Below, piece by piece: positions 8,226 to 61,744 of a DNA stretch of 64,000 nt. Position 1 is the stretch's first letter. Each line of letters begins with the position of its first letter. The notes below the pieces were generated by a model. The model searched no databases, had not been told where the DNA came from, and was given only the letters and a program-made list of their open reading frames with translations. Location: positions 124,001 through 188,000 of IMG/VR virus record IMGVR_UViG_3300033049_000066; one strand, given 5' to 3'. A program made the translations under genes and the position numbers.

Positions 8226-8546
8226 ATGAATACAGTACAAAACACATTCGATCGCTTGAAGTACGACATCCAAGAAGATGATTATGGCAGCCGATATTGG
8301 TACATAAATGGTGAATTGCACAGAGAAGATGGGCCTGCTATTGAATTCGCAAATGGTGCTAAGTGGTGGTACAGAAATGGCAAATTACACAGAGAAGATG
8401 GCCCAGCAATTGAGTTTGCGGATGGCTCCAGGGCCTGGTACAGGCATGGCATAAGACACAGAGATGATGGACCGGCTGTTGAATATTCAGATGGCGAAAC
8501 ATACTGGTACATACACGGTGAGGGTCGCGGTGAGGAGGGACCTTAG
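8226..8546 (+). CDS. HR(E/D)DGPA-repeat protein
   Basis: About 23-aa repeats WYxNGxLHREDGPAIE. Confidence 0.85.
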   Translation: MNTVQNTFDRLKYDIQEDDYGSRYWYINGELHREDGPAIEFANGAKWWYRNGKLHREDGPAIEFADGSRAWYRHGIRHRDDGPAVEYSDGETYWYIHGEGRGEEGP

Positions 8547-8554
8547 ATATTTAC

Positions 8555-8640
8555 TAAGTCATTGATTCTTGGGTAAAATAGAGGTTGACCTTTGGCGCTA
8601 TATGTCATATAATATATATAACAGTTAGATAACAAGCAAA
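8555..8640 (+). promoter_or_regulatory. Repeated early promoter cassette
   Basis: IHF box 8555; TTGACC 8585; TATAAT 8608. Confidence 0.85.
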
Positions 8641-8659
8641 CAAACAATCAGGTGGTATT

Positions 8660-8863
8660 ATGAACAAATTGTTATTAATCGGGTTAGGCACTACGTTGTT
8701 AATTGGATGGAGTGACTGGGCAGTATCAGCACCGTTAATTGACCAGCATCCACTTGAGCTTATTTCTGAAGAAGAATGTGCTGAGCGACGAGCCGAGCGT
8801 GATCGTATGCAGGCACACGAAAAACAAGAATCAGTTGCGTTTTTTAAGAGATGGGAAATATAA
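8660..8863 (+). CDS. Small secreted or membrane hypothetical protein
   Basis: Signal-like N-terminus behind promoter. Confidence 0.55.
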   Translation: MNKLLLIGLGTTLLIGWSDWAVSAPLIDQHPLELISEEECAERRAERDRMQAHEKQESVAFFKRWEI

Positions 8864-8922
8864 AGGTAGACATCCTGCTCGTAGTCCTGTATAATATAAT
8901 ATTATCAGTTTACGGAATTAAA

Positions 8923-9171
8923 ATGAGTTATTATTTTGAAATATTGGACGCAGGTGCTCGCTATTTTTCATTACCGGCGGGATATTATGTAAGTAATACT
9001 AAACGAATGGGCGGCCGACAACAACATTTAACACAAGCAGCTAACAGAATTTGGGAACAACAAGAAGCTGGTGTACGTTACGTAAAGAATCGAGCAGGTC
9101 CGTCTAAGGACGTTGATATGAAAGAATTTATGTGGATTGCATTACGTGCGGTGGAGATCGATAAATTATGA
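8923..9171 (+). CDS. Hypothetical protein
   Basis: Start moved to MSYYF, behind a TAGACA-TATAAT promoter. Confidence 0.6.
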   Translation: MSYYFEILDAGARYFSLPAGYYVSNTKRMGGRQQHLTQAANRIWEQQEAGVRYVKNRAGPSKDVDMKEFMWIALRAVEIDKL

Positions 9172-9340
9172 AAAAATTTCTATTTAACCTCGGCCTTATC
9201 CTTGGTGTGATTTATATAATACTACTTGGTCTGCTTGTGGGTTTAAATGGCCAAAGTTATAACTTCAACGACACAAATTTACTAATTAACGATGGCAGAT
9301 TCCATTTTTCAGAACCAACTAACAATTCGGAGATAAACAA

Positions 9341-9844
9341 ATGAGAGCATATTTTTTCGGAAACATGTACCTGTCTAGCATTCAGCAAGGACTGCAATCG
9401 GCACACGTCGTGGGTGATATGGCTGCGAAGTACCGCCCTAATCAATTTGGATCCACTGACCAATCTAAAATATTTTATGACTGGGCAGAGCACCACAAGA
9501 CGATAATTTTGCTGGATGCTGGCTACGGTGAAGCGATACATGATCTTCATGAATTTTTCAAGCTAGGTGAGAACGATCTGTATCCATATGCTATGTTCAA
9601 TGAAAGTGATGCGGCACTAGATGGCGCAGCTACATGCGTTGGCATAGTGCTAACAGACCGTATGGTAGAAGGTCTGGTAGCTTGGAGAAAGGTAAGAAAT
9701 CGTCCGAAATCACCGCGTACTGCACTTGACCGGCTTGTTCAGGAAGCAGACGGAATCCTTGTAATCGACAAGATAGAAACTCAGTACACTAAATGGGAAA
9801 TTGAGCTCATGTCTCGAATAAGTAAATTTGGGCTGGCACGATAA
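9341..9844 (+). CDS. Pth2-like peptidyl-tRNA hydrolase fold protein
   Basis: GLQSAHVV, KTIILL, FNESD..LDGAATCVG pattern of phage Pth2-like proteins. Confidence 0.55.
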   Translation: MRAYFFGNMYLSSIQQGLQSAHVVGDMAAKYRPNQFGSTDQSKIFYDWAEHHKTIILLDAGYGEAIHDLHEFFKLGENDLYPYAMFNESDAALDGAATCVGIVLTDRMVEGLVAWRKVRNRPKSPRTALDRLVQEADGILVIDKIETQYTKWEIELMSRISKFGLAR

Positions 9845-11264: not shown

Positions 11265-12086
11265 ATGATTAAAAACGTTTTTATCAGGACCCGGCCGGGC
11301 ATCGATCCGAACATCACCGACGGCCTGTTAATTGCCGTCGGTGATTGTATTCGTGAAGCTGGACTGTATATTATCACGCAGAAAGACGAAATAGATGATA
11401 GTACGCTGGTATTATCGCTAGGTGGTGATGGCACGATGATATCGTCGATTTACTTAGCATCAAATCGTGATTCTTATGTTGCTGGTTTTAACTACGGCGA
11501 TCTTGGCTATTTAGTGCCATGCACCGCGTCGTCTACTAACGATTTAATCGCGCAATTAACGGCATTAATAACCGATGTTAATTTTCCGGATTCGACTAAG
11601 TCGACATTTAAAGTAACAAAAGTTCATTTGCCGGTCCTAACCTGGAAGAAAAATCAAGCAATAAATGATTTTTATTTTACACCAGCAGCGAACGGGACAG
11701 CGGCGGATTTTAAAATTGCAATTGGATCGGTTAATGCCGCATTTCATACAAAAAGTTCCGGCATTGTACTTTCGACACCGTTTGGATCAACAGGGCTCGC
11801 GCTTTCTGCGGGTGGACCAATACTAACACCAGACAGCAATGTTTTAGAAATTGTACCATTATTACCGCATACTCTCACCTCGCGCCCGATAATATTCCCG
11901 TACACAGAGAAAGTGGTGATTACATGGGAACGTAAGATTAACATGTTTGCTGATGGTCATCTTATTGATACATTTGGAGATGGCGAGGTTGAGATCAAGT
12001 GCACCCAAGGGAAAATTAACCTCGTGCAGCCAGTCAACTGGAACTTTGTTGAGAATCTCAAAAACAAAATGCGTTGGCATTCGTAG
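11265..12086 (+). CDS. nadK: NAD kinase
   Basis: SLGGDGT, GDLGYL, IND, STPFGSTGLALSAGGPIL, PHTLTSRP. Confidence 0.92.
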   Translation: MIKNVFIRTRPGIDPNITDGLLIAVGDCIREAGLYIITQKDEIDDSTLVLSLGGDGTMISSIYLASNRDSYVAGFNYGDLGYLVPCTASSTNDLIAQLTALITDVNFPDSTKSTFKVTKVHLPVLTWKKNQAINDFYFTPAANGTAADFKIAIGSVNAAFHTKSSGIVLSTPFGSTGLALSAGGPILTPDSNVLEIVPLLPHTLTSRPIIFPYTEKVVITWERKINMFADGHLIDTFGDGEVEIKCTQGKINLVQPVNWNFVENLKNKMRWHS

Positions 12087-12087: not shown

Positions 12088-12187
12088 TAAGTCGTTGATT
12101 AATTCATTTGCAAATAACCGCAATTAGAGGTTGACCTTTGGCGTTATATGTCATATAATGTATATAACAGTTAGATATAGAGCAAAA
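12088..12187 (+). promoter_or_regulatory. Repeated early promoter cassette
   Basis: IHF-like box 12088; TTGACC 12131; TATAAT 12154. Confidence 0.85.
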
Positions 12188-13191: not shown

Positions 13192-14190
13192 ATGAAAAAA
13201 ATTGTAAGAATGGTATTTGGTTCCCACATGTACGGATTAGATACGCCGAATTCTGATATGGACTACAAGGGTATTTACTTGCCGGACCTCGACGAGCTAT
13301 TGCTTGGTACGGCAGCGAAGAATATCAGTTTCACCACCGGCGATAACACGTCCAGGAATGGTGCTGAGGACGTCGACGAAGATTGGATGTCGTTGGGCGA
13401 GTTCATGAAGCTTGCGTTGAAGGGTGAGACTGTGGCACTGGATATGCTTCACGTGAATCCTGACTTGGTGAACGTCGAGCTTGATCCTGAATATGGTTAC
13501 ATTTGGACCGAGTTAGTTAAATTACGCCACTTGTTTTACACTAAGAATCTTAAATCTTACATGGGATACGTCAAGAAACAAGCAGCAAAGTACGGCCTCA
13601 AAGGTAGCCGCATTGCGAATATGCGCGAATCTATTAAAGTGCTTGAGCAGTTTAATGTAGAGCTACTGTTATCTGACGTATGGTACGGGCTGCCTGAGAA
13701 TGAATACGCTAAGAAGATTGAGATGCAGACAAAAACCGGCCAGACAAATCATTTCTACGAAGTGAACATGAAAAAGTATCAGGATACAAATTCTGTCGGA
13801 TATGCCCTGGAACGGATTCAAACCGCGCTGGATAGCTACGGTAATCGTGCTCTGCTAGCTGAGAAGAATGAAGGGGTTGATTGGAAAGCAGTCTCCCACG
13901 CTCTCCGTGCTGGATTTCAGTTGCGCGGCATTTTAAAGAGTGGTGGGTTTAGCTATCCACTCAAAGAAACCGAGTACCTCGCAAAAGTTAAGGCAGGTGA
14001 GCTTGATTACAAAACAGAAGTATCAAACGTGCTAGAAGCTGTAATTACGGAAATTGACGAACTTGTGTTAGTATCCGATTTACCGCAGACCGTAGATGTT
14101 AAATTTTGGAATAACTGGCTTTTGTTTGTGTACATGACTGCCCTGGCAGTACCGGACGTTAACAAATTTATGGAGGCACAAGATGAATAA
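13192..14190 (+). CDS. Phage nucleotidyltransferase (Nuc-transf-type)
   Basis: FGSHMYGLDTPNSDMDYKGIY; DWKAVSHALR. Confidence 0.85.
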   Translation: MKKIVRMVFGSHMYGLDTPNSDMDYKGIYLPDLDELLLGTAAKNISFTTGDNTSRNGAEDVDEDWMSLGEFMKLALKGETVALDMLHVNPDLVNVELDPEYGYIWTELVKLRHLFYTKNLKSYMGYVKKQAAKYGLKGSRIANMRESIKVLEQFNVELLLSDVWYGLPENEYAKKIEMQTKTGQTNHFYEVNMKKYQDTNSVGYALERIQTALDSYGNRALLAEKNEGVDWKAVSHALRAGFQLRGILKSGGFSYPLKETEYLAKVKAGELDYKTEVSNVLEAVITEIDELVLVSDLPQTVDVKFWNNWLLFVYMTALAVPDVNKFMEAQDE

Positions 14191-18249: not shown

Positions 18250-18673
18250 AAATAAGTAAAAAAGAGGTTGACTTTAACTGTTATATGTCATATAATGTAT
18301 ATAACAGTTAGGAAACAAGCAAAAGATACAGATTAATTGTAAAATAAGTAAAAAAGAGGTTGACTTTAACTGTTATATGTCATATAATGTATATAACAGT
18401 TAGGAAACAAGCAAAAGATATTAGAAGTTAGGACTGTTTTTTATAATGTAGCTCAATGGTAGAGCTAGTGCAGATAGGTAATGTGGATTCTAGATTAAGC
18501 ATTATTGATAAACACGATCCGTACAACGGATGATCCTTGTTCGAATCAAGGCATTATAAAAAACAAGCTTAGCAGTTAGATAAAGATTAATTGTAAAATA
18601 AATGAAAAAGAGGTTGACTTTAACTGTTATATGTCATATAATGTATATAACAGTTAGGAAACAAGCAAAAGAT
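18250..18673 (+). repeat. Three copies of an ~80-bp direct repeat, each a promoter
   Basis: GAGGTTGACTTTAACTGTTATATGTCATATAATGTATATAACAGTTAGGAAACAAGCAAAAGAT with -35 at 18268, 18360, 18614. Confidence 0.9.
18435..18565 (+). ncRNA. tRNA-like RNA with extended acceptor and anticodon arms
   Basis: D arm TAGCTCAATGGTAGAGC, T arm CCTTG-TTCGAAT-CAAGG, 14-bp closing stem. Confidence 0.65.
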
Positions 18674-18922: not shown

Positions 18923-18996
18923 ATCCCGGTAGTTTAATGGTAGAACACCAGGCTTTCAACTTGGTAACAGGGGATCGATACCCCTTCGGGATACCA
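18923..18996 (+). tRNA. tRNA-Glu(TTC)
   Basis: Cloverleaf; CCAGG-ctTTCaa-CTTGG; CCA. Confidence 0.9.
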
Positions 18997-19168
18997 AACA
19001 GTTGGACATACACATATTAGTCCCCGGGGAGAACTCGGCAAGACTTTATGTGCTTAACCGACACTGTTAGGAAGAATCTTCCTAACAGTTTAATTCGCTT
19101 TACTCAGTAAAGCACAAAGAACGGAAGCATCGGACATTACGTGCCGTGTAAGTCTTAACGAATTTTAA

Positions 19169-19242
19169 CAGGGTGTGGGAAACCGGTAATCCGTGTGTCT
19201 TGGACACTCAAGAAGCGAGTTCGACTCTCGCCACCCTGACCA
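19169..19242 (+). tRNA. tRNA-Pro(TGG)
   Basis: CAGGGTG/CACCCTG acceptor; ctTGGac; CCA. Confidence 0.85.
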
Positions 19243-19247
19243 ATTTA

Positions 19248-19313
19248 AAAGTGTACTTAAAGTGTACTTAAAGTGTACTTAAAGTGTACTTAAAGTGTAC
19301 TTAAAGTGTACTT
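19248..19313. repeat. 11-bp tandem repeat (AAAGTGTACTT)x6
   Basis: Six perfect copies. Confidence 0.95.
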
Positions 19314-19456
19314 TTAAGGATGTTGTACCGCAGCTTCTAGCTGCAACGTTAGATGTCATAATGCGATTAGTCATTGCGTGAACCCGCCTAACGACGCGAA
19401 CGGAGATCGACTCCCGTTTTTGATGAAATTGCAAACGCATCCTTAAAAGTACATTT
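19304..19456 (+). ncRNA. Candidate multi-hairpin ncRNA closed by a 19-bp stem
   Basis: AAGTGTACTTTTAAGGATG / CATCCTTAAAAGTACATTT; internal GCAGC/GCTGC and CGTTAG/CTAACG. Confidence 0.6.
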
Positions 19457-19465
19457 ATTAAATAT

Positions 19466-19551
19466 AGAAGTGTAGGAAAATTGGTAACCCCGGTAGGCTT
19501 TGAACCTGCTTTCTTCGGATATTGAGAGTTCGAGTCTCTCCACTTCTGCCA
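19466..19551 (+). tRNA. tRNA-Gln(TTG) with long variable arm
   Basis: AGAAGTG/CACTTCT; ctTTGaa; CCA. Confidence 0.8.
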
Positions 19552-19565
19552 ATTTAAAAAAATAC

Positions 19566-19651
19566 GCTGTCGCGGTGAAGTTGGAGAGTCACGCAAGATT
19601 GTAAACCTTGTCCCTATGGGTGAGTAGGTTCGATTCCTACAGGCAGCACCA
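19566..19651 (+). tRNA. tRNA-Tyr(GTA)
   Basis: ttGTAaa; variable arm; CCA. Confidence 0.88.
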
Positions 19652-19656
19652 AATTT

Positions 19657-19730
19657 GGCTTATTAGTATAGTGGCAGTACCACACGTTGTCTGCGTGAGA
19701 GCAGGAGTTCGATTCTCCTATAAGCCGCCA
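19657..19730 (+). tRNA. tRNA-Asp(GTC)
   Basis: GGCTTAT/ATAAGCC; ttGTCtg; CCA. Confidence 0.85.
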
Positions 19731-19931
19731 AAAATGGATAATATAATTAATGAATAATTCATTAATTATATTGTCAAGTCGATACTTAGACCTGATCAGT
19801 CTTTGTACAGGCTAACCAAAAATGGATAATATAATTAATGAAGATCACCGCCCATGAGGGGCTGGCACGAATTCATTGTTATATTGTCAAGTCGGTAATT
19901 AGACCTGATCAGTCTTTGTACAGGCTAACCA
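19731..19931 (+). ncRNA. Two tandem copies of a hairpin RNA ending in ACCA
   Basis: Copies 19731-19818 and 19819-19931 differ mainly in the apical loop. Confidence 0.6.
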
Positions 19932-19937
19932 AATTAC

Positions 19938-20013
19938 GCGGGATTGATGTTTAACGGCAGCATGGGAGTTTTCCAAACTTTTCGTATCGGTTCGAATCCG
20001 ATATCCCGCTCCA
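19938..20013 (+). tRNA. tRNA-Gly(TCC)
   Basis: GCGGGAT/ATCCCGC; ttTCCaa; CCA. Confidence 0.9.
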
Positions 20014-20233
20014 AATTAAAAGTATACGGTGTATATTATTACGTATACTTAAACAAATCGAAGGTGAAGGTTGAGAAATTGACTAAGTAACAACCCTGAA
20101 CTTTGGTAAAGATGGATAAAAGTGCCGGTCATTTCCTCCATCCAAGTCCCTGAGGCGTAGACCTCTACATAACGGTAGGTCAATACTGTTGCGGACTTGT
20201 CAATGGCCTCAAATTTAAAAGAGTAAGCAGAGC

Positions 20234-20309
20234 TCCAGGTTAACGTTCAATGGTGAGACGTGCTCGACTGTTAATCGAGAGGAGACTGAATCGTTCTCAG
20301 TACCTGGAG
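20234..20309 (+). tRNA. tRNA-Asn(GTT), no encoded CCA, extended acceptor stem
   Basis: TCCAGGT/ACCTGGA; CTCGA-ctGTTaa-TCGAG. Confidence 0.75.
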
Positions 20310-21091
20310 CTCTGCTTATTATTATATTCATCAACTGAATTCTTTAGCGTTTCGTACGATATCGAACAGTTAGTTTTCTTTTGATTATTTTTGGTCCAGG
20401 ACATTAATTCACAATTTAGCGGGTGTTTTATATAATAAGGGTCGTATCCGTTACGGATTGCAGTATTTACAGAAACCTTATGATCTCGAGTAATTCCTGA
20501 TGTATTTGAATACGACCACATTCCGTGTTCTTTAAGTATGCTGTTGTATTGCTCAAACAATTCCGGATAATTAGATAATGAAAACGTAAACGCATATCTG
20601 TTTCGATTATTTCGTTTATATAGATATGCGTGGTCGTTACAATATTTTTGTTTAATTCGTGAAATAAATTTTTCATTACAATGAGCACACTTTGTTAACC
20701 AAATTTTTGAATATGGCGAAGTTACTTTAGGCTTCTTTACTTTAGGCTTCTTTACTTTAGGCTTTGCTGGGTATTTTTCTTTAAGTGTTTTGGACAATTT
20801 TTTATAATGTTCGGTATCTCGTGCAAGATTATTGCATGTAGCTGAACAACTCCTTGAGCAAAATTTATTATGTCGCTGGATATACGGTAACGCAATCTCG
20901 CAGTGTCTACAGGCATTAGGATTTTCGCTGTATTTAAAAAGAACTATCTTATGATTTTTGCGGATGGCGCTTAATGTAGATTTTGCGTTATTAATCTTGT
21001 GTTGGTGATAGCCGGACTTATGCACTTTATTATGAGCTGATAATCCATATACTGATTTAAATTCTTTATCGCATGTTTTACATTTATACAT
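20297..21091 (-). CDS. Free-standing HNH homing endonuclease with zinc fingers
   Basis: C2H2 finger, CRHC..FCSRSC, TRDHKVS..IKHPLNCEL..NNQK; ATAAATA upstream. Confidence 0.8.
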   Translation of the reverse strand: MYKCKTCDKEFKSVYGLSAHNKVHKSGYHQHKINNAKSTLSAIRKNHKIVLFKYSENPNACRHCEIALPYIQRHNKFCSRSCSATCNNLARDTEHYKKLSKTLKEKYPAKPKVKKPKVKKPKVTSPYSKIWLTKCAHCNEKFISRIKQKYCNDHAYLYKRNNRNRYAFTFSLSNYPELFEQYNSILKEHGMWSYSNTSGITRDHKVSVNTAIRNGYDPYYIKHPLNCELMSWTKNNQKKTNCSISYETLKNSVDEYNNKQSSRY

Positions 21092-21158
21092 GTAACTATT
21101 TATAATATTTTGAGGTTCCGTTAAACTTTCAGGAGCCAAATTACATATAAATACAGTT

Positions 21159-21506
21159 ATGAAAATATTATTATCGATATTGCTGCTGCTAATTTCTTTA
21201 AGTAGTCAAGCAGAGCCGGGATGGAAAGTATTCGCAGAATTCTTCCTTCTAGACAGAGCCGAAGTATATTGTGGCAAAATCAAGGGTGACCGAGACATAA
21301 CTAAAATATTTACAAATAGGAAAAAAATAGCACTATCGGAAGTTGTCGACTCTGGCACATACTGGTGTGGAGTAACATACAATATGTCTGCAATTGGTGT
21401 GCCATTTGAGAGCAACCCAACCGAGCTAGAGCCAGTGCTAATGACAGTCGGACAGGGTGCAGAAATATTGGTATCGTCACCGAAACCCCCTAGTAATATA
21501 CAATAA
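21159..21506 (+). CDS. Secreted small beta-rich protein
   Basis: Signal peptide SQA/; TATAAATA upstream; ends PKPPSNIQ. Confidence 0.7.
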   Translation: MKILLSILLLLISLSSQAEPGWKVFAEFFLLDRAEVYCGKIKGDRDITKIFTNRKKIALSEVVDSGTYWCGVTYNMSAIGVPFESNPTELEPVLMTVGQGAEILVSSPKPPSNIQ

Positions 21507-21514
21507 TCAAATTA

Positions 21515-21704
21515 TGTCGTGTGCCATTGGAACGATTTCTGGTAAATGATACGATGCAGTGGTAATTGACCGAAACAGGTTGGCTTGGTCGCTAACAATG
21601 TCGAGATAGGAAACTGTAACTGAAGCACTATTCCTAACCAGTTGATGTGCGGATAACGTATTATTTACCAGAGAGATTGAGCTGATGGATAACACACGGC
21701 GCCA
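21515..21704 (+). ncRNA. ~190-nt rod-like RNA ending in CCA
   Basis: TGTCGTGTG/CACACGGCG-CCA; inner 18-bp stem TTTCTGGTAAATGATACG/CGTATTATTTACCAGAGA. Confidence 0.65.
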
Positions 21705-21850
21705 AATTAATGTTGAAGATACTGATATGCTCTGACCATTTGCGTTATCATACAGAATATGTCTTCATAAACTTGAGCATGGTAACTAGGACAGAGCCTA
21801 GGGCGGCCACAGATAGCACGTGGAAGGCGTCGGCGGGGAAACATGCATCC

Positions 21851-21921: not shown

Positions 21922-21929
21922 CAAATTTT

Positions 21930-37613: not shown

Positions 37614-37700
37614 TAAGTCATTGATTATTAGCTAAATTAGAGGTTGACCTTTGGCGCTACTTGTCATATAATGTATATAACAGTTAGATAAAGAGCAAAG
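37614..37700 (+). promoter_or_regulatory. Repeated early promoter cassette (further copies at 37929-38026 and 38472-38570)
   Basis: IHF box; -35 at 37644, 37972, 38515. Confidence 0.85.
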
Positions 37701-37703
37701 GTT

Positions 37704-37928
37704 ATGAATGATAGCACTTACGAAACTAGAATAGATTATGACGGTAACAAGCGATGGTACGTAAATGGAAAATTACACCGGGAAGATGGCCCAGCTATTG
37801 AACTTAAAAACGGTAGCAAGTACTGGTACAGAAACGACAAATTGCACCGGGAAGATGGCCCAGCTATTGAGTTCGCGAACGGTAGTAAGCACTGGTACTT
37901 AAACGGAATAAAAGTTGAGGAGTTCTAG
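37704..37928 (+). CDS. HR(E/D)DGPA-repeat protein (short)
   Basis: MNDSTYETRID...GIKVEEF. Confidence 0.85.
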   Translation: MNDSTYETRIDYDGNKRWYVNGKLHREDGPAIELKNGSKYWYRNDKLHREDGPAIEFANGSKHWYLNGIKVEEF

Positions 37929-38039
37929 TAAGTCATTGATTAATTGATTTACAAATAGCCGCAATTAGAGGTTGACATCTTGGGCTACTTGTCTTATAAT
38001 GTATATAACAGTTAGATAAAGAGCAAAGGAACAAAGATT

Positions 38040-38471
38040 ATGAATGATAGCACTTACGAAACTAGAATAGATCGTGTCGGTAACAAGCGATGGTACAACA
38101 ATGGCAAATTACATAGAGAAGATGGCCCAGCCGTTGAACTCGCAGACGGTGACAATCACTGGTACGTAAACGGTAAAATACATAGAGAAGATGGGCCAGC
38201 TATTGAGTTCGCAAATGGTGACAAATTTTGGTACATAAATGATAAATTACATAGAGAAGATGGGCCAGCTATCGAGTACGCAAATGGTAACAAGCGGTGG
38301 TACATAAATGGTAAATTACACCGAGAAGATGGGCCGGCTATTGTATTTGCAAACGGTAGTAAGCACTGGTACTTAAACGGCAAAAGACACAGAGATAACG
38401 CACCGGCTATTGAATTTGCGGATGGCGATAAGGCGTGGTACTTAGACGGAATAAAAGTTGAGGAGTTCTAG
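38040..38471 (+). CDS. HR(E/D)DGPA-repeat protein
   Basis: Same termini as 37704, three more repeats. Confidence 0.85.
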   Translation: MNDSTYETRIDRVGNKRWYNNGKLHREDGPAVELADGDNHWYVNGKIHREDGPAIEFANGDKFWYINDKLHREDGPAIEYANGNKRWYINGKLHREDGPAIVFANGSKHWYLNGKRHRDNAPAIEFADGDKAWYLDGIKVEEF

Positions 38472-41501: not shown

Positions 41502-41538
41502 GTTGACAGATTCGCAGAAGAGCGTATAATATATACAC

Positions 41539-44399: not shown

Positions 44400-44791
44400 T
44401 GCCTGCGCAGAAACCTATGACCAAGCGTATGAAAGAGATGATGGAATCTCTATGGGCTCGTGGTGACATCCGTGCTGACCAGCTCGACAAAAATGTGCTA
44501 AAAAAGTTAATAAAGGCTGGTCAAGTTAAGCGAATACAAAGCACAAGAATCGGCCCTGGCATAAGAAGTTCGGTTACAATGATTGTTGCATTAGTCCAGG
44601 CACCAATACAAAATGAAACTAACACTGGTGGTCCTTACGCTAAGCGCAAGGCGCAGCTAGATTCTTCCGGATTGCCGTACAGAGGCAAGACGTGGGGTAA
44701 GATACGACTAGACCTGCCGCGTCAGGCGCGTGAGAAAGAAATATCCGATAAAAAGAAAATGTGGGCAAAACTTAAACGGTACCGCGCATGA
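44399..44791 (+). CDS. Basic hypothetical protein
   Basis: Coupled ORF ending KMWAKLKRYRA. Confidence 0.6.
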   Translation: MPAQKPMTKRMKEMMESLWARGDIRADQLDKNVLKKLIKAGQVKRIQSTRIGPGIRSSVTMIVALVQAPIQNETNTGGPYAKRKAQLDSSGLPYRGKTWGKIRLDLPRQAREKEISDKKKMWAKLKRYRA

Positions 44792-45099
44792 GTACAGCAC
44801 AAGACACATTCAATCGATTAAAAACGAAAATTGTCGTAGATAACGAGGGCAATAAACACTGGTACGTCAATGGGCTATTGCATCGGGAAGATGGCCCGGC
44901 TGTTGAGTACGCAAATGGTGACAAATTTTGGTACAAGAATGACAAGATGCACCGTGAGAATGCCCCGGCTGTTGTCCGTACAAATGGTGACAAGTTTTGG
45001 TACCAGAATGGCAAATTGCACCGAGTGGGCGGTGCGGCCGTTGAATTTGCAGAGGGTGATGCCGGTTGGTACGAAAATGGTGAAAGGATATGGAAATGA
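44788..45099 (+). CDS. HR(E/D)DGPA-repeat protein
   Basis: MSTAQDTFNRLK leader + repeats. Confidence 0.85.
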   Translation: MSTAQDTFNRLKTKIVVDNEGNKHWYVNGLLHREDGPAVEYANGDKFWYKNDKMHRENAPAVVRTNGDKFWYQNGKLHRVGGAAVEFAEGDAGWYENGERIWK

Positions 45100-45476
45100 G
45101 TACAGCACAAGACACATTCAATCGATTAAAGTACGACATTCAAATACATGCTGATGGCACTAAAATTTGGTACAAGCATGGCGAAAGACATAGAACAGAT
45201 GGGCCAGCCGTTGAACAGCTAAATGGTGACAAATTTTGGTACAAAGATGGCAAAAGACACAGAACAGATGGGCCAGCGATTGAATACGCGGATGGTGATA
45301 AAAAATGGTATCAGCATGGCAGATTACATAGAGATGACGGTCCAGCCGTTGAACACGCCGACGGCACCAAAATTTGGTACAAGAATGGTAAAAAACACAG
45401 AGATGATGGGCCTGCTATTGAATATCCAAATTGTGACAAATTTTGGTACATAAATGGCGAGCTAATAGACAAATGA
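45096..45476 (+). CDS. HR(E/D)DGPA-repeat protein
   Basis: ATGA-coupled; same leader. Confidence 0.85.
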   Translation: MSTAQDTFNRLKYDIQIHADGTKIWYKHGERHRTDGPAVEQLNGDKFWYKDGKRHRTDGPAIEYADGDKKWYQHGRLHRDDGPAVEHADGTKIWYKNGKKHRDDGPAIEYPNCDKFWYINGELIDK

Positions 45477-45991
45477 ATACTGCACAAGACATATTTGATC
45501 GCCTGAAGTACGACATCCAAATAGATGCCTGTGGTGACAAATTTTGGTACCAAAACGGTAAAAGACATAGAGATGACGGGCCAGCTATCGAGTACGCAGA
45601 TAGCAGCAAAGAGTGGTACAAGCATGGCGAAAGACATAGAACAGATGGACCAGCCGTTGAACAGCTAAATGGCGAGCGACATTGGTACAAGGATGGCAAA
45701 AGACATAGAGAAGATGGCCCCGCATTTGTATCAACAAATGGCACCAAGCACTGGTACAAGCATGGCAAATTACACCGAGAAGATGGGCCATCAATTGAGC
45801 TAGCAAATGGCGACCAACATTGGTACATAAATGGCAAAAGACACAGAGAAGATGGACCAGCTATTGAACAGGTAAATGGCGACCGAAGTTGGTACCAAAA
45901 TGGTGAAAGACATAGAGAAGATGGCCCGGCAATTGAATACTCAGATGGCACCAAGCACTGGTACTTAAATGGTGAAAGAATATACAAATGA
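45473..45991 (+). CDS. HR(E/D)DGPA-repeat protein
   Basis: ATGA-coupled; MNTAQDIFDRLK. Confidence 0.85.
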   Translation: MNTAQDIFDRLKYDIQIDACGDKFWYQNGKRHRDDGPAIEYADSSKEWYKHGERHRTDGPAVEQLNGERHWYKDGKRHREDGPAFVSTNGTKHWYKHGKLHREDGPSIELANGDQHWYINGKRHREDGPAIEQVNGDRSWYQNGERHREDGPAIEYSDGTKHWYLNGERIYK

Positions 45992-46368
45992 ATACAGCAC
46001 AAGACACATGGGATTGCTTAAAATACGACATCCAAATAGATGCCTGTGGTGACAAATTTTGGTACCAAAATGGTGAAAGACATAGAGATGATGGGCCAGC
46101 TATCGAGTACGCAGATAGCAGCAAAGAGTGGTACATAAATGGGCTATCGCACAGAGATGATGGACCAGCTATTGAGTACGCGGATGGTGACAAGTTTTGG
46201 TACATAAATGGTAAAAGACATAGAGAAGATGGGCCAGCTGTTGAGCTAGCAAATGGCGGCCGAAGTTGGTTCGTTAATGGTGAATTACATAGAGAAGATG
46301 GACCAGCTGTTGAACTAGCAAATGGCGACCGAAGTTGGTACATAAATGGTAAAAGAATATATAAATAG
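45988..46368 (+). CDS. HR(E/D)DGPA-repeat protein
   Basis: ATGA-coupled; MNTAQDTWDCLK. Confidence 0.85.
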   Translation: MNTAQDTWDCLKYDIQIDACGDKFWYQNGERHRDDGPAIEYADSSKEWYINGLSHRDDGPAIEYADGDKFWYINGKRHREDGPAVELANGGRSWFVNGELHREDGPAVELANGDRSWYINGKRIYK

Positions 46369-48769: not shown

Positions 48770-48786
48770 AATAGAGGAGCTCTATT

Positions 48787-50253
48787 ATGAACAAAATACA
48801 AAACATGTTCGCACCACAAGCGAACGACATAGCATACACAGAAGATAAGAAATTAAACATTAGCTTGATATGCAGAATTGACAGCTATAAATTTTCGCAT
48901 CCGTTTGCCTATCCGAACGATATAAACATTGATGGGATGACCTCATACGGTGAGACCCGCGTGTCACCAAAAGATACAATCGTTCCATTTGGTATGCAAA
49001 TGCTTCTTAAGCGTTATCTTACTCAGACAATTACAATGGCTGACATTGACGCGGCTGAGGATTTTAGCACCGCACATTTCGGCAGGACACTGTTTGATCG
49101 CAGTGCGTGGGAAAAAGTTGTCCGTGAATACGCTGGCAAGCTCCCGCTGATAATCAGAGCGGTTCCGGAAGGAACAGTCATGAATGGTAGCCAGCCCATC
49201 TACTCAGTTACAGTGCTAGACAGAGATTTGTTCTGGATGAGTGCCGGCTTTGAAACGCTCATCCAACGCGCGATTTGGTACCCGACGACGATTGCCACGA
49301 TGGATTACATCGTGCGCAATGAGATGGAAGCGTTCTACGATAAGACAGGGGCTGACAAATCTTTGCTCCCGTTCGCCCTGCATGATTTTGGAGGACGTGG
49401 GGTGAGCAGTGCGGAAACCGCCGAGATTGGTGGCGCCGCGCATCTTGTTAATTTTCTAGGCAGTGACACGGTCGAGGGCGTTCTTGCTGCGAATTTCTAC
49501 TACAAGGAAGAAATGAGCGGGTTCAGCGTGTACGCTACGGAGCATGCCATACAGTGTTCCTTCGGTAGCGGGACAGATGACGCGCTACGCTATCTTAGAC
49601 GACAGCTACGCAATGCCCCGCCGGGTTCCGTCGTAAGCATTGTTATTGACGGTTACGACGTGTATCGTGAAGCAAATCTACTATGCACCGTGATGAAGGA
49701 TGAGATTATCGCCAGCAAGGCAAAGGTCGTGTTCCGGCCGGACAGTGGGGACATGATGGAAATTATCCCTCGCTTGCTATTGATGCAATCAGAAGCATTC
49801 GGTACTACAAAAACTGCCGAGGGCTACTTACAAATAAATTATGTCGGGCTCATCCAAGGGGATGGAATTGACAGAGCGATTATTAGCGAGGTCTTGGATT
49901 TAGTTACGTTCTTGGGCTTTGCGGCTGATACGGTGATGTTCGGCAGTGGAGGCGCTTTGCTACAAAAAGTGAATCGTGACACGCTGAAATTCGCACAGAA
50001 GGCCTGCGCTATTCTCGTGGATGGTGAGTGGGTTGGTATCGCAAAAGACCCAATTACCGATCACGGTAAGAAGTCCAAGGAAGGGGTATTGACTCTCGCA
50101 AGAAATATCGAGAGTGGTGAGCTAACGACGGCGCGGTTAGACCAGGGGTCGTTGCCGGCGGGGATGGAAGACGCGATGAAGCTCGTGTACTTCAAAGGGG
50201 ATTTGTTCAATGAAATTACATTCGCAGAGGTCAGAAAAAATGTTATCAAGTAA
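48787..50253 (+). CDS. nadV: Nicotinamide phosphoribosyltransferase (Nampt)
   Basis: DSYKFSH, LHDFGGRG, GSDT, ATEH, RPDSGD, QGDG, FGSGGALLQ..NRDT, KDPITD..KKSK. Confidence 0.95.
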   Translation: MNKIQNMFAPQANDIAYTEDKKLNISLICRIDSYKFSHPFAYPNDINIDGMTSYGETRVSPKDTIVPFGMQMLLKRYLTQTITMADIDAAEDFSTAHFGRTLFDRSAWEKVVREYAGKLPLIIRAVPEGTVMNGSQPIYSVTVLDRDLFWMSAGFETLIQRAIWYPTTIATMDYIVRNEMEAFYDKTGADKSLLPFALHDFGGRGVSSAETAEIGGAAHLVNFLGSDTVEGVLAANFYYKEEMSGFSVYATEHAIQCSFGSGTDDALRYLRRQLRNAPPGSVVSIVIDGYDVYREANLLCTVMKDEIIASKAKVVFRPDSGDMMEIIPRLLLMQSEAFGTTKTAEGYLQINYVGLIQGDGIDRAIISEVLDLVTFLGFAADTVMFGSGGALLQKVNRDTLKFAQKACAILVDGEWVGIAKDPITDHGKKSKEGVLTLARNIESGELTTARLDQGSLPAGMEDAMKLVYFKGDLFNEITFAEVRKNVIK

Positions 50254-52030: not shown

Positions 52031-52927
52031 ATGAAATACCTTTATCTTTTAATAGCTGTGATGGCAATCTCATCGTGCAGTGGACCAAACAAGATCACCT
52101 TTACTGATACTGGGCGGTGGAGGTTGGCTGCTGACGCAGAACCAATTGTAGAAACCTTAGTAGGGCACGAGGTTGAAAATACCAAGCCCGAACCGGAAAT
52201 AGTCGAGCCCGAACCGGAAATAGTCGAGCCCGAACCGGAAGATTCAATCTATCTTCTCAATCCGGCGCTTTCACAAACACTAATTTACACAGGGCCGATG
52301 TCCGGCAAGGTAGACTTCGCAGTCGGGTCGCGTACTTTCATAGCGGATCAGATACGGTTTGCTCCAGCGGTGTGGGCTCGGTGTGATGGGGGTGGTTACG
52401 CAAGCGTAGAGGGTGATGAATGTACGCCTCTAGAAAATACTAATACCGCCCGGTGGGGGAAACTCACAAAGCAGATTGCTCCGTACTTAGAATCCGAGGA
52501 TGAGCCAGATGAACACACGCTGTTCACAGAAGCTGATCGCAATGTCATTGAAGTAATTGGTGGTACTCGCTATGGGGTACTGAGCTTAACTGCTGCTATT
52601 ACCAGTGTGCCATCAACACTAGAATCATCGCAGCGCGGGGAGATCTACACATTAAATCATAGCTGGCGGGGTTACCCTTCGTACCTGTCTGTAGAAACAC
52701 AAATTTCCGATGACAATGAATACGCCTGTACTAGAATTTTAATTACAGCACTGGGGTATTTTGCACTAGAGAATGAAATCCCGAGCATTATTGTGGATGA
52801 AATTATATGTGGAAATGAGCGCTATGATCTTGTGTTATCGAATGATTCAGTTGTATGGACTATGTTTTACCCGACATTCTCTATGGAAATTGAGCAAGTA
52901 ATTGCTAGTACTAGAATCGTACAGTAA
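52031..52927 (+). CDS. Lipoprotein with EPEIVEP tandem repeat
   Basis: Lipobox ISSC; signal MKYLYLLI identical to upstream gene. Confidence 0.7.
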   Translation: MKYLYLLIAVMAISSCSGPNKITFTDTGRWRLAADAEPIVETLVGHEVENTKPEPEIVEPEPEIVEPEPEDSIYLLNPALSQTLIYTGPMSGKVDFAVGSRTFIADQIRFAPAVWARCDGGGYASVEGDECTPLENTNTARWGKLTKQIAPYLESEDEPDEHTLFTEADRNVIEVIGGTRYGVLSLTAAITSVPSTLESSQRGEIYTLNHSWRGYPSYLSVETQISDDNEYACTRILITALGYFALENEIPSIIVDEIICGNERYDLVLSNDSVVWTMFYPTFSMEIEQVIASTRIVQ

Positions 52928-53001
52928 CCGCAAATAGAGGTTGACTTCCTGAGCTACTTGTCGTATAATGTATATAACAGTTAGAGAAAGGAGCAAAGAT
53001 T

Positions 53002-53644: not shown

Positions 53645-53730
53645 TAAGTCATTGATTCTTTGTAAATTAGAGGTTGACCTTTGGTGTTATATGTCATATA
53701 ATGTATATAACAATTAGATAACAAGCAATG
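53645..53730 (+). promoter_or_regulatory. Repeated early promoter cassette
   Basis: IHF box 53645; TTGACC 53674; TATAAT 53697. Confidence 0.85.
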
Positions 53731-59106: not shown

Positions 59107-59130
59107 CGGAAAGTACAAAGATCATCAAAC

Positions 59131-59153
59131 AGCACTCTAAGGAGTGCTTTTTT
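59131..59153 (+). terminator. Intrinsic terminator
   Basis: AGCACTC-taag-GAGTGCT + U-tract. Confidence 0.8.
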
Positions 59154-59243
59154 ATGGCAAAATAAATGTAATTAGCATTTGACCTTTGGCGCTAGTTGTC
59201 ATATAATATATATTATAGTTAGTAAAAGGCAAAAGCAACGATT

Positions 59244-59693
59244 ATGAATACAGCACAAAACACATTCAATCTATTAAAGTACGATATTCGTGTTGACAAA
59301 GATGGTAGCACGAGATGGTACATAAATGGCAGATTACACAGAGATGATGGCCCAGCTGTTGAGTTCGCAAGCGGTGGCAGAGCGTGGTACCAAAATGGCA
59401 GAAGACATAGAGATGATGGACCAGCTGTTGAATACGCGAGCAGTGACAAATTTTGGTACAAAGACGGCAAAAGACATAGAGATGATGGGCCAGCTATTGA
59501 ATTCGCAGGCGGCACGAATCATTGGTACAAAGACGGAAAGTTACACAGAGAAGATGGGCCTGCTATTGAACTCGCGATTGGCGCGAATCATTGGTACCAA
59601 AATGGCAAATTACATAGAGAAGATGGCCCGGCGGTTGAATCCGCAGATGGCGAAAAACAGTGGTACTTAAATGGGAAGGAAGTAACCAAATGA
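59244..59693 (+). CDS. HR(E/D)DGPA-repeat protein
   Basis: Promoter 59179-59207; MNTAQNTFNLLK. Confidence 0.85.
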   Translation: MNTAQNTFNLLKYDIRVDKDGSTRWYINGRLHRDDGPAVEFASGGRAWYQNGRRHRDDGPAVEYASSDKFWYKDGKRHRDDGPAIEFAGGTNHWYKDGKLHREDGPAIELAIGANHWYQNGKLHREDGPAVESADGEKQWYLNGKEVTK

Positions 59694-60154
59694 GTACAGC
59701 ACAAGCGACCTTTGATGGGTTAAAATCTAGAATAACCGTAGACGATGATGGTGGCGCAAGATGGTACTCCGGGCTAGTATTACACAGAATAGGTGGGCCA
59801 GCAATTGAGCTAGCAAATGGTGGCAGGTACTGGTACATAAATGGTGAATTACACAGAGAAGATGGCCCGGCTATTACGTACGCAAATGGCACAACTCAAT
59901 GGTACCGGCATGGCAGATTACACAGAGAAAATGGTCCAGCTATTGAACGACTAACCGGCAGCAAGCACTGGTACATAAATGGCGTGAGACACAGGGAAGA
60001 TGGCCCGGCCGCTATGTACGAAAGTGGTGATCAATATTGGTACATAAATGGTGAGCTGCACAGAGAAGATGGGCCAGCTATTGAATTCGCGAATAGTGAC
60101 CAATATTGGTACAGAAACGGCAAGATAATAGACAAGCCTTTGGATATTTGCTAA
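59690..60154 (+). CDS. HR(E/D)DGPA-repeat protein
   Basis: ATGA-coupled; MSTAQATFDGLK. Confidence 0.85.
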   Translation: MSTAQATFDGLKSRITVDDDGGARWYSGLVLHRIGGPAIELANGGRYWYINGELHREDGPAITYANGTTQWYRHGRLHRENGPAIERLTGSKHWYINGVRHREDGPAAMYESGDQYWYINGELHREDGPAIEFANSDQYWYRNGKIIDKPLDIC

Positions 60155-60384
60155 CTTATTGATTTATATAGGATTCTAGCATTTATTAAAACAGAGTAAT
60201 ATATTGGTAAGTCGTTGAAATATATAAGAATAGTGGTTTTTACCGGCGTTTTTAAACGGCATTCACGTATCAGTACCAGTAAACATATCAAAACCGCCCT
60301 AAAATAATCGCAATTAGAGGTTGACCTTTGGCGCTACTTGTTATATAATGTATGTAACAGTTAGATAAAGAGCAAGGGAAGATT

Positions 60385-61221
60385 ATGAATCTAGCACAAG
60401 ACACATTCAATCGCTTAAAAACTGAAATTGTAATAGACGAATTTGGCACTAAGTATTGGTACGTCAACAGTGAATTACACAGAGAAGATGGCCCGGCTGT
60501 TGAACATTCGGATGGTAGCAAAGAATGGTACAAATCCAGAAAATTACATAGAGAAAATGGCCCAGCTGTTGAACTTACGGGCGGTGGCAAGTATTGGTAC
60601 TTAGACGGAAAACAACATAGAGATGATGGGCCTGCGGTAGAATTTACAAATGGCGGCAAAGAATGGTACAAACATGGCAAAAGACATAGAAAAGATGGGC
60701 CAGCTATTGAGTACGAGAATGGCTCCAAATTTTGGTACATAAATGATAAATTACATAGAGAAGATGGGCCAGCTATCGAGTACGCAAATGGTAACAAGCG
60801 GTGGTACATAAATGGTAAATTACACCGAGAAGATGGGCCGGCTATTGAACTTAAAAACGGTGGCAAGTACTGGTACATAAATGGAAAATTACACAGAGAA
60901 GATGGGCCAGCTATTGAATACGGGGATGGCACCCAGGCCTGGTACTTAAATGATAAATTACACAGAGATGATGGACCGGCTGTAGAATACGCAGATGGTG
61001 GCAGTGAGTGGTACCAAAATGGCAAAAGACATAGAGATGATGGTCCAGCTGTAGAACATTCAGCCGGTATACACAGAGAAGATGGGCCAGCTATTGAACG
61101 GGCAAATGGTGGCAGGTACTGGTACAAGGATGGCAAAAGACATAGAGAAAATGGACCAGCTATTGAACGGGCAAATGATGAAAAACAGTGGTACTTAAAT
61201 GGAAAGAAAGTAGACAAATGA
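60385..61221 (+). CDS. HR(E/D)DGPA-repeat protein (longest member)
   Basis: Promoter 60321-60349; about 11 repeats, one truncated. Confidence 0.85.
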   Translation: MNLAQDTFNRLKTEIVIDEFGTKYWYVNSELHREDGPAVEHSDGSKEWYKSRKLHRENGPAVELTGGGKYWYLDGKQHRDDGPAVEFTNGGKEWYKHGKRHRKDGPAIEYENGSKFWYINDKLHREDGPAIEYANGNKRWYINGKLHREDGPAIELKNGGKYWYINGKLHREDGPAIEYGDGTQAWYLNDKLHRDDGPAVEYADGGSEWYQNGKRHRDDGPAVEHSAGIHREDGPAIERANGGRYWYKDGKRHRENGPAIERANDEKQWYLNGKKVDK

Positions 61222-61598
61222 ATACCGCACAAGACATATTTGATCGCTTGAAGTACGACATTGTCACTGACAGTGCAGGCAACAAATATTGGTACTTACA
61301 CGGCAAATTACACAGAGATGATGGGCCTGCTATTGAGTACACAAATGGAACCAAGTTCTGGTACAAAAATGGCGAGAGGCACAGAGATGATGGCCCAGCG
61401 ACTATGTACCCAAATGGTGACAAGTTTTGGTACAGAAACAATAAAAGACACAGAGATGATGGCCCAGCTATTGAATACGCAGATGGTAGTAAGGAGTGGT
61501 ACATAGATAACAATTTACACAGAGAAGAGGGGCCTGCTATTGAGTACACAGCTGGCCAAAAAAAGTGGTACACGCATGGAGTAAAGGTAGACAAATGA
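61218..61598 (+). CDS. HR(E/D)DGPA-repeat protein
   Basis: ATGA-coupled; MNTAQDIFDRLK. Confidence 0.85.
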   Translation: MNTAQDIFDRLKYDIVTDSAGNKYWYLHGKLHRDDGPAIEYTNGTKFWYKNGERHRDDGPATMYPNGDKFWYRNNKRHRDDGPAIEYADGSKEWYIDNNLHREEGPAIEYTAGQKKWYTHGVKVDK

Positions 61599-61744
61599 GT
61601 ACATCACAAGAAACATTCGATCGCTTGAAGTATGACATTCATGTAGACGCAAACGGCAAAAAGGTTTGGTACAAGAATGGCGTACGGCACAGAGAGGATG
61701 ACCTGGCGATTGAAGAAGCAAGTGAACTCGCCAGCAAATCATAG
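61595..61744 (+). pseudogene. Truncated HR(E/D)DGPA-repeat gene
   Basis: MSTSQETFDRLKYDI..RHREDDLAIE..*; a single degenerate repeat. Confidence 0.65.

What the first reader, a model, noticed from the sequence alone, without database searches (positions are those of the whole stretch)
8226..61744. Twelve-member expanded family of 23-aa HR(E/D)DGPA-repeat proteins
Seen: copies at 8226, 37704, 38040, 44788-46368 (4 coupled genes) and 59244-61744 (5 genes), with 1 to about 11 repeats each. The scaffold WYxNGxxHRxDGPA(I/V)E is fixed and variation concentrates in the residues after E. Identical DNA blocks are shared between distant copies (38040 and 60385 both encode KFWYINDKLHREDGPAIEYANGNKRWYINGKLHREDGPAI; 45473 and 45988 share their 5' parts), indicating recombinational shuffling. 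Most clusters sit behind the strong early promoter cassette. Inference: a diversifying MORN-like beta-hairpin binder repertoire, for example anti-defence decoys or adaptors.
Basis: partly seen in the sequence, partly recalled or inferred. Interest (0 to 1): 0.68.

Follow-up and report, generated by a model that had tools for sequence, protein, structure and literature searches.

The report
Expanded MORN-like repeat genes in phage
A large marine T4-like phage carries 14 genes (12 in this window) for small soluble proteins built only of a 23-residue MORN-like beta-hairpin repeat; the family is real, kept by selection, reshuffled by recombination and common in uncultured viruses, but its function is unknown and positive diversifying selection is not shown.

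Summary
All twelve ORFs exist at the stated places, and 49 strict HR(E/D)DGPA matches all lie in them on the + strand. TRF finds 69-bp arrays at every locus. The whole 293-kb virus record (T4-like, seawater) has two more members, 14 in all.

Scaffold positions show dN/dS of 0.04-0.05 with scrambled synonymous codons, so these are old, maintained genes. Variable positions (3, 17-19, 21, 23) show 0.4-0.74, never above 1, which indicates relaxed constraint rather than demonstrated diversifying selection.

Recombination is clear: a 122-bp exact block is shared by 38040 and 60385, termini are mosaic, and repeat number changes. Five of the six clusters sit directly behind a repeated sigma-70 consensus cassette resembling the PeSLs of T4-type phages.

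Relatives are abundant in uncultured viruses, some with larger expansions, and rare in isolates. A protein-binding adaptor role early in infection is the best guess. The anti-defence role is untested, and no RNA data exist.

The parts
8226..8546 (+). family gene, 106 aa, N-cap helix plus 3 full units and an atypical C-end
37704..37928 (+). family gene, 74 aa, 2 units, short N-terminus of the MNDSTYETRID type
38040..38471 (+). family gene, 143 aa, 5 units. It has the same 5' and 3' ends as 37704 and differs by three internal units
44788..45099 (+). family gene, 103 aa, 3 units (two degenerate). Its start overlaps the stop of the upstream ORF 44399-44791 (ATGA)
45473..45991 (+). family gene, 172 aa, 6 units, ATGA-coupled
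45988..46368 (+). family gene, 126 aa, 4 units, ATGA-coupled. Its 5' 146 nt are about 97% identical to 45473
59244..59693 (+). family gene, 149 aa, 5 units; the member that was folded (pLDDT 95.5)
59690..60154 (+). family gene, 154 aa, 5 units, ATGA-coupled to 59244
60385..61221 (+). family gene, 278 aa, 11 HR motifs, including one unit shortened by an in-frame 9-aa deletion (aa 208-221)
61218..61598 (+). family gene, 126 aa, 4 units, ATGA-coupled
61595..61744 (+). 49-aa remnant: N-cap plus one degenerate unit (GP replaced by DL), ATGA-coupled
38222..38343 (+). 122-bp block identical to 60726-60847 (trace of gene conversion or recombination)
60726..60847 (+). 122-bp block identical to 38222-38343
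8150..8225 (+). repeated promoter/5'UTR cassette (TTGACC-17-TATAAT) directly before 8226
37626..37703 (+). cassette before 37704 (11 of 12 consensus)
37954..38039 (+). cassette before 38040 (TTGACA-17-TATAAT, 12 of 12)
59161..59243 (+). cassette before 59244
60303..60384 (+). cassette before 60385
41503..41531 (+). nearest consensus promoter (12 of 12, not the cassette) upstream of the 44788 cluster; operon membership is inferred only

Best explanation
This is a lineage-expanded multigene family in a marine T4-like jumbo phage: 14 genes and about 65 repeat units. Each gene encodes a small, soluble protein made of an N-terminal capping helix, 1-11 copies of a 23-residue MORN-like beta-hairpin unit (W-Y-x-N-G-x-x-H-R-x-D-G-P-A-x-E-x-x-x-G-x-K-x) and a short C-cap.

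Shown:
- The fold is an elongated single-layer beta-sheet.
- The scaffold residues are under strong purifying selection, while six positions per unit are nearly free to vary.
- The genes multiply and change by tandem whole-gene duplication (ATGA-coupled arrays), unequal crossing-over that changes unit number, and gene conversion between distant copies.

Inferred:
- Most genes are transcribed early by host sigma-70 RNA polymerase from a repeated, PeSL-like promoter cassette in the hyperplastic regions.
- The products act inside the infected cell as protein-binding scaffolds or adaptors, as solved MORN proteins do, each paralog offering a different surface to host or phage partners.

The target and the biological effect (host takeover, anti-defence or other) are unknown.
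For: - Sequence, period and copies.
- T4-like phage record of 293 kb from seawater.
- No hydrophobic segment in any member (max KD19 0.83).
- Selection: invariant W1, H8, G12, P13 and A14 alongside mixed synonymous codons. dN/dS is 0.04-0.05 for scaffold positions and 0.4-0.74 for variable positions.
- Recombination: a 122-bp exact block, mosaic 5' ends, and 37704 versus 38040 sharing both ends while differing by three units.
- ATGA overlaps at all junctions.
- Consensus promoters and a repeated cassette. PeSL precedent: PMC2839356, PMC4122927.
- Family breadth: at least 7959 proteins; at least 516 confirmed stretches in IMG/VR; Atlas clusters are 77-100% viral; BFVD matches in uncultured Caudovirales, megaviruses and Atu_ph07. 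Expansions occur in other viral records, with 10 and 44 matches.
- A second T4-like record, G001, carries copies with the same N-cap architecture.
Against: - No expression data: no RNA run holds the sequence.
- No binding partner is known. The one co-fold tried gave no verdict.
- Longer relatives rarely carry informative fused domains, so the function rests on analogy.
- The 44788 cluster lacks the cassette.
Confidence: 0.55

Rival explanations
1. Anti-defence repertoire. Each paralog is a decoy, sponge or immunity-like binder (as MORN-variant YwqK proteins neutralise toxins) that blocks a different host defence effector. Expansion and variation would track host defence diversity.
For: The genes are small, sit behind early-type promoters in hyperplastic regions, and form a multi-paralog set with variable surface positions. 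One cluster lies immediately upstream of an NMNAT/Nudix, NadA and NAMPT cluster that resembles the NARP2 counter-defence pathway (bioRxiv 10.1101/2024.02.11.579819). Precedent from my own knowledge of the family: MORN-variant repeat proteins serve as immunity proteins, and NCBI names a YwqK family antitoxin.
Against: There is no hit to the YwqK or any other NCBIfam model. dN/dS at variable positions is below 1. No match to a known anti-defence protein was seen. Adjacency to NAD genes holds for one cluster of six. The host is unknown.
Confidence: 0.2
2. Self-assembling scaffold. The translationally coupled paralogs associate with each other (end-to-end or tail-to-tail, as MORN1 dimers do) into a larger intracellular or virion-associated structure.
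For: ATGA coupling of 4-5 paralogs suggests co-production. Solved MORN1 structures include a V-shaped and an extended form (entries listed). That MORN1 forms dimers is from my own knowledge.
Against: The co-fold of 59244 with 59690 scored 0.00, which the tool counts as no verdict. The N-terminal helix and the C-cap seal both sheet ends in the model. Early-type promoters argue against virion parts.
Confidence: 0.08
3. Membrane or envelope targeting. The repeats bind phospholipid or cell-wall polymers, which is the historical reading of MORN.
For: The MORN name and older literature summarised in PMC5753266. PMC9238414 mentions MORN repeats in phage endolysins.
Against: There is no signal peptide, TM segment or catalytic domain. 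The proteins are mostly acidic to neutral (pI 4.9-7.1), which is unfavourable for anionic lipids. Among the MORN entries retrieved, the ligand-bound ones hold protein or peptide partners (MORN4/Myo3a, junctophilin-2 with a CaV1.1 peptide).
Confidence: 0.07
4. Largely functionless, recombination-driven expansion: repeat DNA that spreads because it and its cassettes are recombinogenic.
For: Variable positions evolve near neutrally. There is a 49-aa remnant and a unit with an internal deletion. The cassettes are spread through the genome.
Against: Scaffold dN/dS is 0.04-0.05 with near-saturated synonymous change. All but one copy keep intact caps and reading frames. The same architecture is kept in another T4-like phage and in hundreds of viral contigs.
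Confidence: 0.06

Closest known systems
MORN repeat proteins (Pfam PF02493; solved: MORN1, MORN4, junctophilins, radial-spoke RSP1/RSP10, SET7/9 N-domain)
   Same: A 23-residue period. Glycine-marked turns and an aromatic at the start of the unit. Successive beta-hairpins form an elongated single-layer sheet. These are the best structural matches. Multigene MORN families are described in giant viruses (PMC5753266).
   Different: The consensus is distinct (W-Y..N-G..H-R-x-D-G-P-A). No member reaches the Pfam MORN model, and no solved relative is found by sequence. These are stand-alone phage proteins of 49-278 aa with their own N-terminal helix cap.
MORN_2 'MORN repeat variant' (PF07661) / YwqK-type antitoxin proteins of bacteria
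   Same: Bacterial and phage-borne hairpin repeats of similar length. 6 of 14 members give weak MORN_2 hits, and some homologs carry a precomputed PF07661 hit.
   Different: The best E-value is 0.048 (14 bits against a cut-off of 29.6). There is no NCBIfam YwqK hit and no adjacent toxin gene.
Pfam DUF6745 (PF20530)
   Same: 13 of 14 members and most database homologs hit it.
   Different: The hits cover only about profile positions 59-83 of 206, that is one repeat-like motif and not the domain. No paper mentions the family.
PeSL cassettes of T4-type phages (PMC2839356, PMC4122927)
   Same: A short, highly conserved cassette with a strong sigma-70-like promoter is repeated at least 25 times in hyperplastic regions, flanks small non-core ORFs and bounds duplicated modules.
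   Different: A G+C-rich terminator stem-loop, part of the PeSL definition, is not evident in most copies. The conserved part here extends into the 5'UTR and Shine-Dalgarno region. Function is not tested.
Repeat-protein multigene families of large viruses (ankyrin, MORN, FNIP and others in amoebal giant viruses; PMC5753266)
   Same: Many paralogs of a protein-binding repeat. The closest homologs include megavirus and mimivirus proteins.
   Different: The carrier here is a tailed T4-like phage. The copies are short and translationally coupled.

Membership tests
MORN repeat (PF02493) | Match to the curated sequence model at gathering score | tested here: not met
   No PF02493 hit for any of the 14 members, even at E up to 1
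MORN repeat (PF02493) | Repeat period of about 23 residues in tandem | tested here: met
   Exact 23-aa spacing of about 65 units; TRF period 69 bp
MORN repeat (PF02493) | Fold: consecutive beta-hairpins forming an elongated single-layer sheet | tested here: met
MORN_2 (PF07661) / YwqK antitoxin | Match to PF07661 or to the NCBIfam YwqK model at the curated cut-off | tested here: not met
   6 of 14 members hit, best E 0.048, 14.3 bits against a cut-off of 29.6. There is no NCBIfam hit
MORN_2 (PF07661) / YwqK antitoxin | Adjacent cognate toxin gene | tested here: not met
   Neighbours are other family members, unknown small ORFs or NAD enzymes
DUF6745 (PF20530) | Coverage of the 206-position domain | tested here: not met
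   Whole-protein scores reach 27-37 bits in five members, but the aligned stretch is only about positions 59-83
PeSL regulatory cassette (T4-type phages) | Strong sigma-70-like early promoter, conserved and repeated in hyperplastic regions | tested here: met
   TTGAC(A/C)-17-TATAAT with conserved flanks. At least 25 cassette copies in the genome, 5 of them directly before family genes. Promoter activity itself was not tested
PeSL regulatory cassette (T4-type phages) | Stem-loop that acts as transcription terminator | tested here: inconclusive
   No G+C-rich hairpin is seen in most printed copies, and the terminator scan found none at the cassettes in 37400-46500. The cassettes were not folded systematically
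Diversity-generating retroelement target | Reverse transcriptase and template repeat in the genome | tested here: not met
   No PF00078 match in the 293-kb record, which is 83% complete; the controls rang
T4-like phage (host genome of the family) | Gp23-type major capsid protein | tested here: met
   PF07068 at E 1.6e-97, genome 249550-250515; an RnlA-like gene at 62295-63377

The most novel reading that the evidence does not exclude
The family is a phage-encoded, recombination-shuffled repertoire of MORN-like binders, each of which captures a different host immune or housekeeping protein early in infection. It would be a bacteriophage counterpart of the ankyrin and MORN host-range gene families of giant viruses and poxviruses. 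New specificities would arise by unit exchange between paralogs, and whole modules would move via PeSL-like cassettes.
Probability: 0.15. Interest if true: 0.75.

Novelty: new variant of a known kind. Interest (0 to 1): 0.4.

Why it matters
This repeat type is very common in uncultured viruses: at least 7959 proteins in the first search and at least 516 IMG/VR stretches. Yet it has no repeat model of its own in Pfam, no solved structure and no paper that I could find. PMC9238414 reports that MORN-type repeat proteins are 37-fold under-recovered by short-read assembly of marine viromes, so the family is probably under-counted.

A T4-like genome with 14 well-resolved, mostly intact paralogs behind recognisable early promoters is a convenient entry point for two things. 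One is defining the family, for example with a new repeat profile. The other is asking what large phages do with arrays of binding modules. The practical value is as a candidate list for host-takeover or anti-defence screens. Until a partner is found it remains a descriptive finding.

Tried and rejected
- Megablast of 12 kb of the window against 50,697 phage records gave no match. tblastn of one member found only 7 records: Celeribacter P12053L, Agrobacterium Atu_ph07 and three uncultured megaphage records.
- The search for close relatives of the phage through RnlA found none. The 688-aa neighbour is absent from the four other viral records. An ortholog-based selection test was therefore impossible.
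- A profile search of PDB sequences found nothing related.
- The motif strings and DUF6745 appear in no paper. The jumbo-phage comparative paper does not mention MORN.
- Reverse transcriptase (DGR) is absent.
- The co-fold of the coupled neighbours 59244 and 59690 scored 0.00, which the tool counts as no verdict and is not evidence either way.
- The N- and C-terminal domains of the 534-aa member have no homolog among 240 collected proteins or elsewhere in the genome. In the AF2 model they are of low to middling confidence and were not searched.
- Longer relatives show no recurrent informative fusion partner.
- Reads: only Logan contigs of DNA runs were available, and they break inside the repeats. 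No copy-number or allele comparison was possible.
- The long antisense ORFs over the arrays (for example 60288-61232, minus strand) were considered and rejected as genes. Homologs, codon-position pattern and start/stop architecture all support the + frame.
Full report
**1. What is there**

The window is bases 124001-188000 of a 293,278-bp IMG/VR virus record, estimated 83% complete. The record encodes a Gp23-type major capsid protein (PF07068, E 1.6e-97). It also has an RnlA-like RNA ligase and 25 tRNA genes within this window. Two seawater metagenome runs of one study hold the DNA. It is therefore an uncultured marine T4-like jumbo phage. No record among 50,697 phage genomes is close at the DNA level.

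A strict form of the motif occurs 49 times in the six-frame translation, always on the + strand and always inside these ORFs. Units follow each other at exactly 23 residues. Tandem Repeats Finder independently reports period-69 arrays with 65-79% matches at every locus.

The whole genome has two further members:
- A 534-aa protein at genome 98031-99635. It has two arrays of 4 and 6 units, a separate N-terminal domain and a mostly helical, low-confidence C-terminal region.
- A 3-unit copy on the minus strand at about 269184-269528, which probably starts at GTG.

The family thus has 14 genes and about 65 units.

**2. Anatomy**

A typical member has three parts:
- An N-terminal segment of the type M-N-T-A-Q-D-T-F-D-R-L-K-Y-D-I. 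The genes at 37704 and 38040 have a shorter variant.
- Units of consensus W-Y-I-N-G-K-L-H-R-E-D-G-P-A-I-E-Y-A-N-G-D-K-F.
- A C-terminal half unit of the type W-Y-x-N-G-x-x-V-x-K.

Per-position entropy shows W1, H8, R9, G12, P13 and A14 as invariant or nearly so. Positions 3, 17, 18, 19, 21 and 23 carry 2.0-3.2 bits.

No member has a hydrophobic stretch. The pI range is 4.9-7.1, so these are soluble cytoplasmic proteins.

Within the two arrays every junction is an ATGA start/stop overlap. This includes the junction between the unrelated upstream ORF 44399-44791 and the first family gene. By that rule the gene listed at 45090 more likely starts at 45096. The last gene (61595-61744) is a 49-aa remnant with one degenerate unit. 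The gene at 60385 contains one unit shortened by an in-frame 9-residue deletion.

**3. Fold**

The 149-aa member was folded with an alignment of paralogs and homologs. The result was pLDDT 95.5 and pTM 0.83: one N-terminal helix followed by short strands in a regular hairpin pattern.

Foldseek against the PDB is led by these entries:

| Entry | E-value |
|---|---|
| MORN1 of T. brucei, T. gondii and P. falciparum | 7.8e-6 to 3.6e-4 (prob 1.0, TM 0.5) |
| Chlamydomonas radial spoke head and neck (7jrj_F) | 9.1e-4 |
| MORN4/Myo3a | 1.0e-3 |
| Junctophilin-2 (9uo9) | 1.0e-3 |

By sequence the family is not MORN:
- No member hits PF02493.
- 6 of 14 members give sub-threshold MORN_2 hits (best E 0.048).
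- 13 of 14 members hit DUF6745, but only over about 20 of its 206 positions.
- NCBIfam has nothing.
- No solved structure is related by sequence.

In the 534-aa member both arrays fold with pLDDT above 94, while the flanking domains score 29-77.

**4. Selection and turnover**

Mean DNA identity between units is 68%. At the invariant residues the synonymous codons are well mixed. For example, G12 uses GGG 28, GGC 21, GGA 9 and GGT 3, and P13 uses CCA 35, CCG 16 and CCT 10. The conservation is therefore selective and not due to recent copying.

Pooled Nei-Gojobori estimates, binned by unit divergence:

| Position class | dN/dS |
|---|---|
| Scaffold | 0.04-0.05 |
| Intermediate | 0.24-0.46 |
| Six variable positions | 0.41-0.74 |

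The value never exceeds 1, even among the least diverged pairs. These pairs are not independent and synonymous sites approach saturation, so positive selection cannot be excluded. It is not shown either, and relaxed constraint explains the data. No reverse transcriptase is present.

Recombination, by contrast, is evident:
- A 122-bp exact block is shared by 38040 and 60385, which lie 22 kb apart.
- The 5' ends of 45473 and 45988 share 110 bp at 97%.
- A 55-bp block at 98% links 45096 and 45473.
- 37704 and 38040 share both ends and their flanks and differ by three internal units.

Units within this genome are more alike than units compared with a second T4-like record (nt identity 0.68 and 0.76 within, 0.63 between). 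The consensus is genome-specific at positions 15, 16, 19, 21 and 23. This fits lineage-specific expansion with some homogenisation.

**5. Regulation and context**

Five of the six clusters in the window (8226, 37704, 38040, 59244, 60385) start 60-70 nt after the -35 hexamer (TTGACC or TTGACA) of a sigma-70 consensus promoter with a 17-nt spacer and a TATAAT -10 box. The promoter is embedded in a cassette that is conserved from about 15 nt upstream of the -35 element to the Shine-Dalgarno region. That cassette is repeated at least 25 times in the genome.

[quoted passage not shown] The terminator stem-loop of PeSLs is not evident here. The 44788 cluster has no cassette; the nearest consensus promoter is at 41503.

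Early expression by host polymerase is an inference, because no RNA run holds the sequence. Logan contigs confirm the assembled sequence in pieces but break inside the repeats.

Neighbours are mostly unknown small ORFs. The 44788 cluster abuts NMNAT/Nudix, NadA and NAMPT genes. That set is like the NARP2 counter-defence pathway (bioRxiv 10.1101/2024.02.11.579819; PMC13464706).

**6. Relatives**

The word-indexed search saturated at 7959 of 8000 scored candidates. The closest hits examined lie on phage-like contigs carrying PhoH, ClpP, SSB, RecA and many small ORFs.

ESM Atlas neighbours are 77-100% viral. BFVD matches include uncultured Caudovirales (TM up to 0.89), Powai lake megavirus, mimivirus R871 and Agrobacterium phage Atu_ph07.

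IMG/VR gave at least 587 pattern matches, 516 of them confirmed, and many lie on contigs of 200-400 kb. 311 stretches were confirmed in bacterial and archaeal genomes of many phyla. One locus, examined in Janthinobacterium, looks like a mobile-element early region.

Other viral records carry expansions too. A 318-kb T4-like record has 10 matches, in at least 9 genes that share the N-cap architecture. A 91-kb fragment has 44 matches. Among isolates the family is rare, at 7 of 50,697 records.

The literature notes that MORN repeats are 37-fold enriched in marine viral long reads over assemblies (PMC9238414). It also describes MORN multigene families in giant viruses (PMC5753266). I found nothing on this variant.

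**7. Interpretation**

Shown: a maintained, expanded and recombining family of soluble MORN-like hairpin-repeat proteins in a T4-like phage.

Inferred: early expression, and a protein-binding adaptor function by analogy with solved MORN complexes (MORN4 with Myo3a, junctophilin with a CaV1.1 peptide, radial-spoke assemblies).

The anti-defence reading is attractive but rests on context only. Self-assembly, membrane binding and functionless expansion are less likely, for the reasons given under the rival explanations. The co-fold of two coupled neighbours returned no verdict and is not used as evidence.

**8. Verdict**

It is a new variant of a known kind: MORN-like repeat multigene families of large viruses. 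It is worth a dedicated profile and a functional screen, but it is not categorically new. Interest is 0.4.

Noticed in passing
window 46429-50253 and 11265-12086: A cluster of NAD-metabolism genes: NMNAT/Nudix (46429-47508), quinolinate synthase NadA (47837-48769), NAMPT (48787-50253) and, separately, an NAD kinase (11265-12086). The NAMPT plus NMNAT pair resembles the NARP2 counter-defence pathway. NadA and NAD kinase in a phage are less usual.
   Followed up: partly
window 18923-34290: A tRNA island with 25 tRNA genes, all on the + strand, interspersed with small ORFs. A 92-bp unit that contains the promoter cassette is duplicated in tandem at 18250-18420.
   Followed up: partly
window 8150-8225, 8567-8640, 12113-12186, 37626-37703, 37954-38039, 38497-38573, 52923-52998, 53656-53728, 59161-59243, 60303-60384, 61769-61846, and many outside the window: A promoter/5'UTR cassette of about 80-100 bp, 88-100% identical between copies and present at least 25 times in the genome. 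It is PeSL-like but has no obvious terminator hairpin. It bounds duplicated gene modules such as 37704 and 38040.
   Followed up: partly
genome 98031-99635 (outside the window; L002:787-2391): A 534-aa family member with two repeat arrays. Each array is preceded by the same short linker, and the protein has orphan N- and C-terminal domains. It is the only member with extra domains, and these have no detectable homologs.
   Followed up: partly
window 60288-61232 (-), 45415-46002 (-), 45861-46343 (-): Long antisense ORFs (up to 314 aa) run over the repeat arrays. They are by-products of the repeat's codon pattern and are unlikely to be genes.
   Followed up: partly
window 41771-43837: A 688-aa protein of unknown function (phrog_33734, no Pfam hit). 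It lies behind a perfect consensus promoter at 41503 and may head the operon that ends with the 44788-46368 family cluster.
   Followed up: partly
window 62295-63377, 13192-14190, 40463-41158: An RnlA-type RNA ligase/tail-fibre attachment protein, a nucleotidyltransferase (phrog_388) and a weak QueC-like hit. These are RNA repair or modification functions near the tRNA island.
   Followed up: no
G002 (IMGVR_UViG_3300048502_000185, 91 kb, about 20% complete): This viral fragment has 44 matches to the family, many in dense tandem runs (about 78-85 kb and 32-36 kb of the record). The expansion is far larger than the one in this window. The kind of virus was not determined.
   Followed up: no
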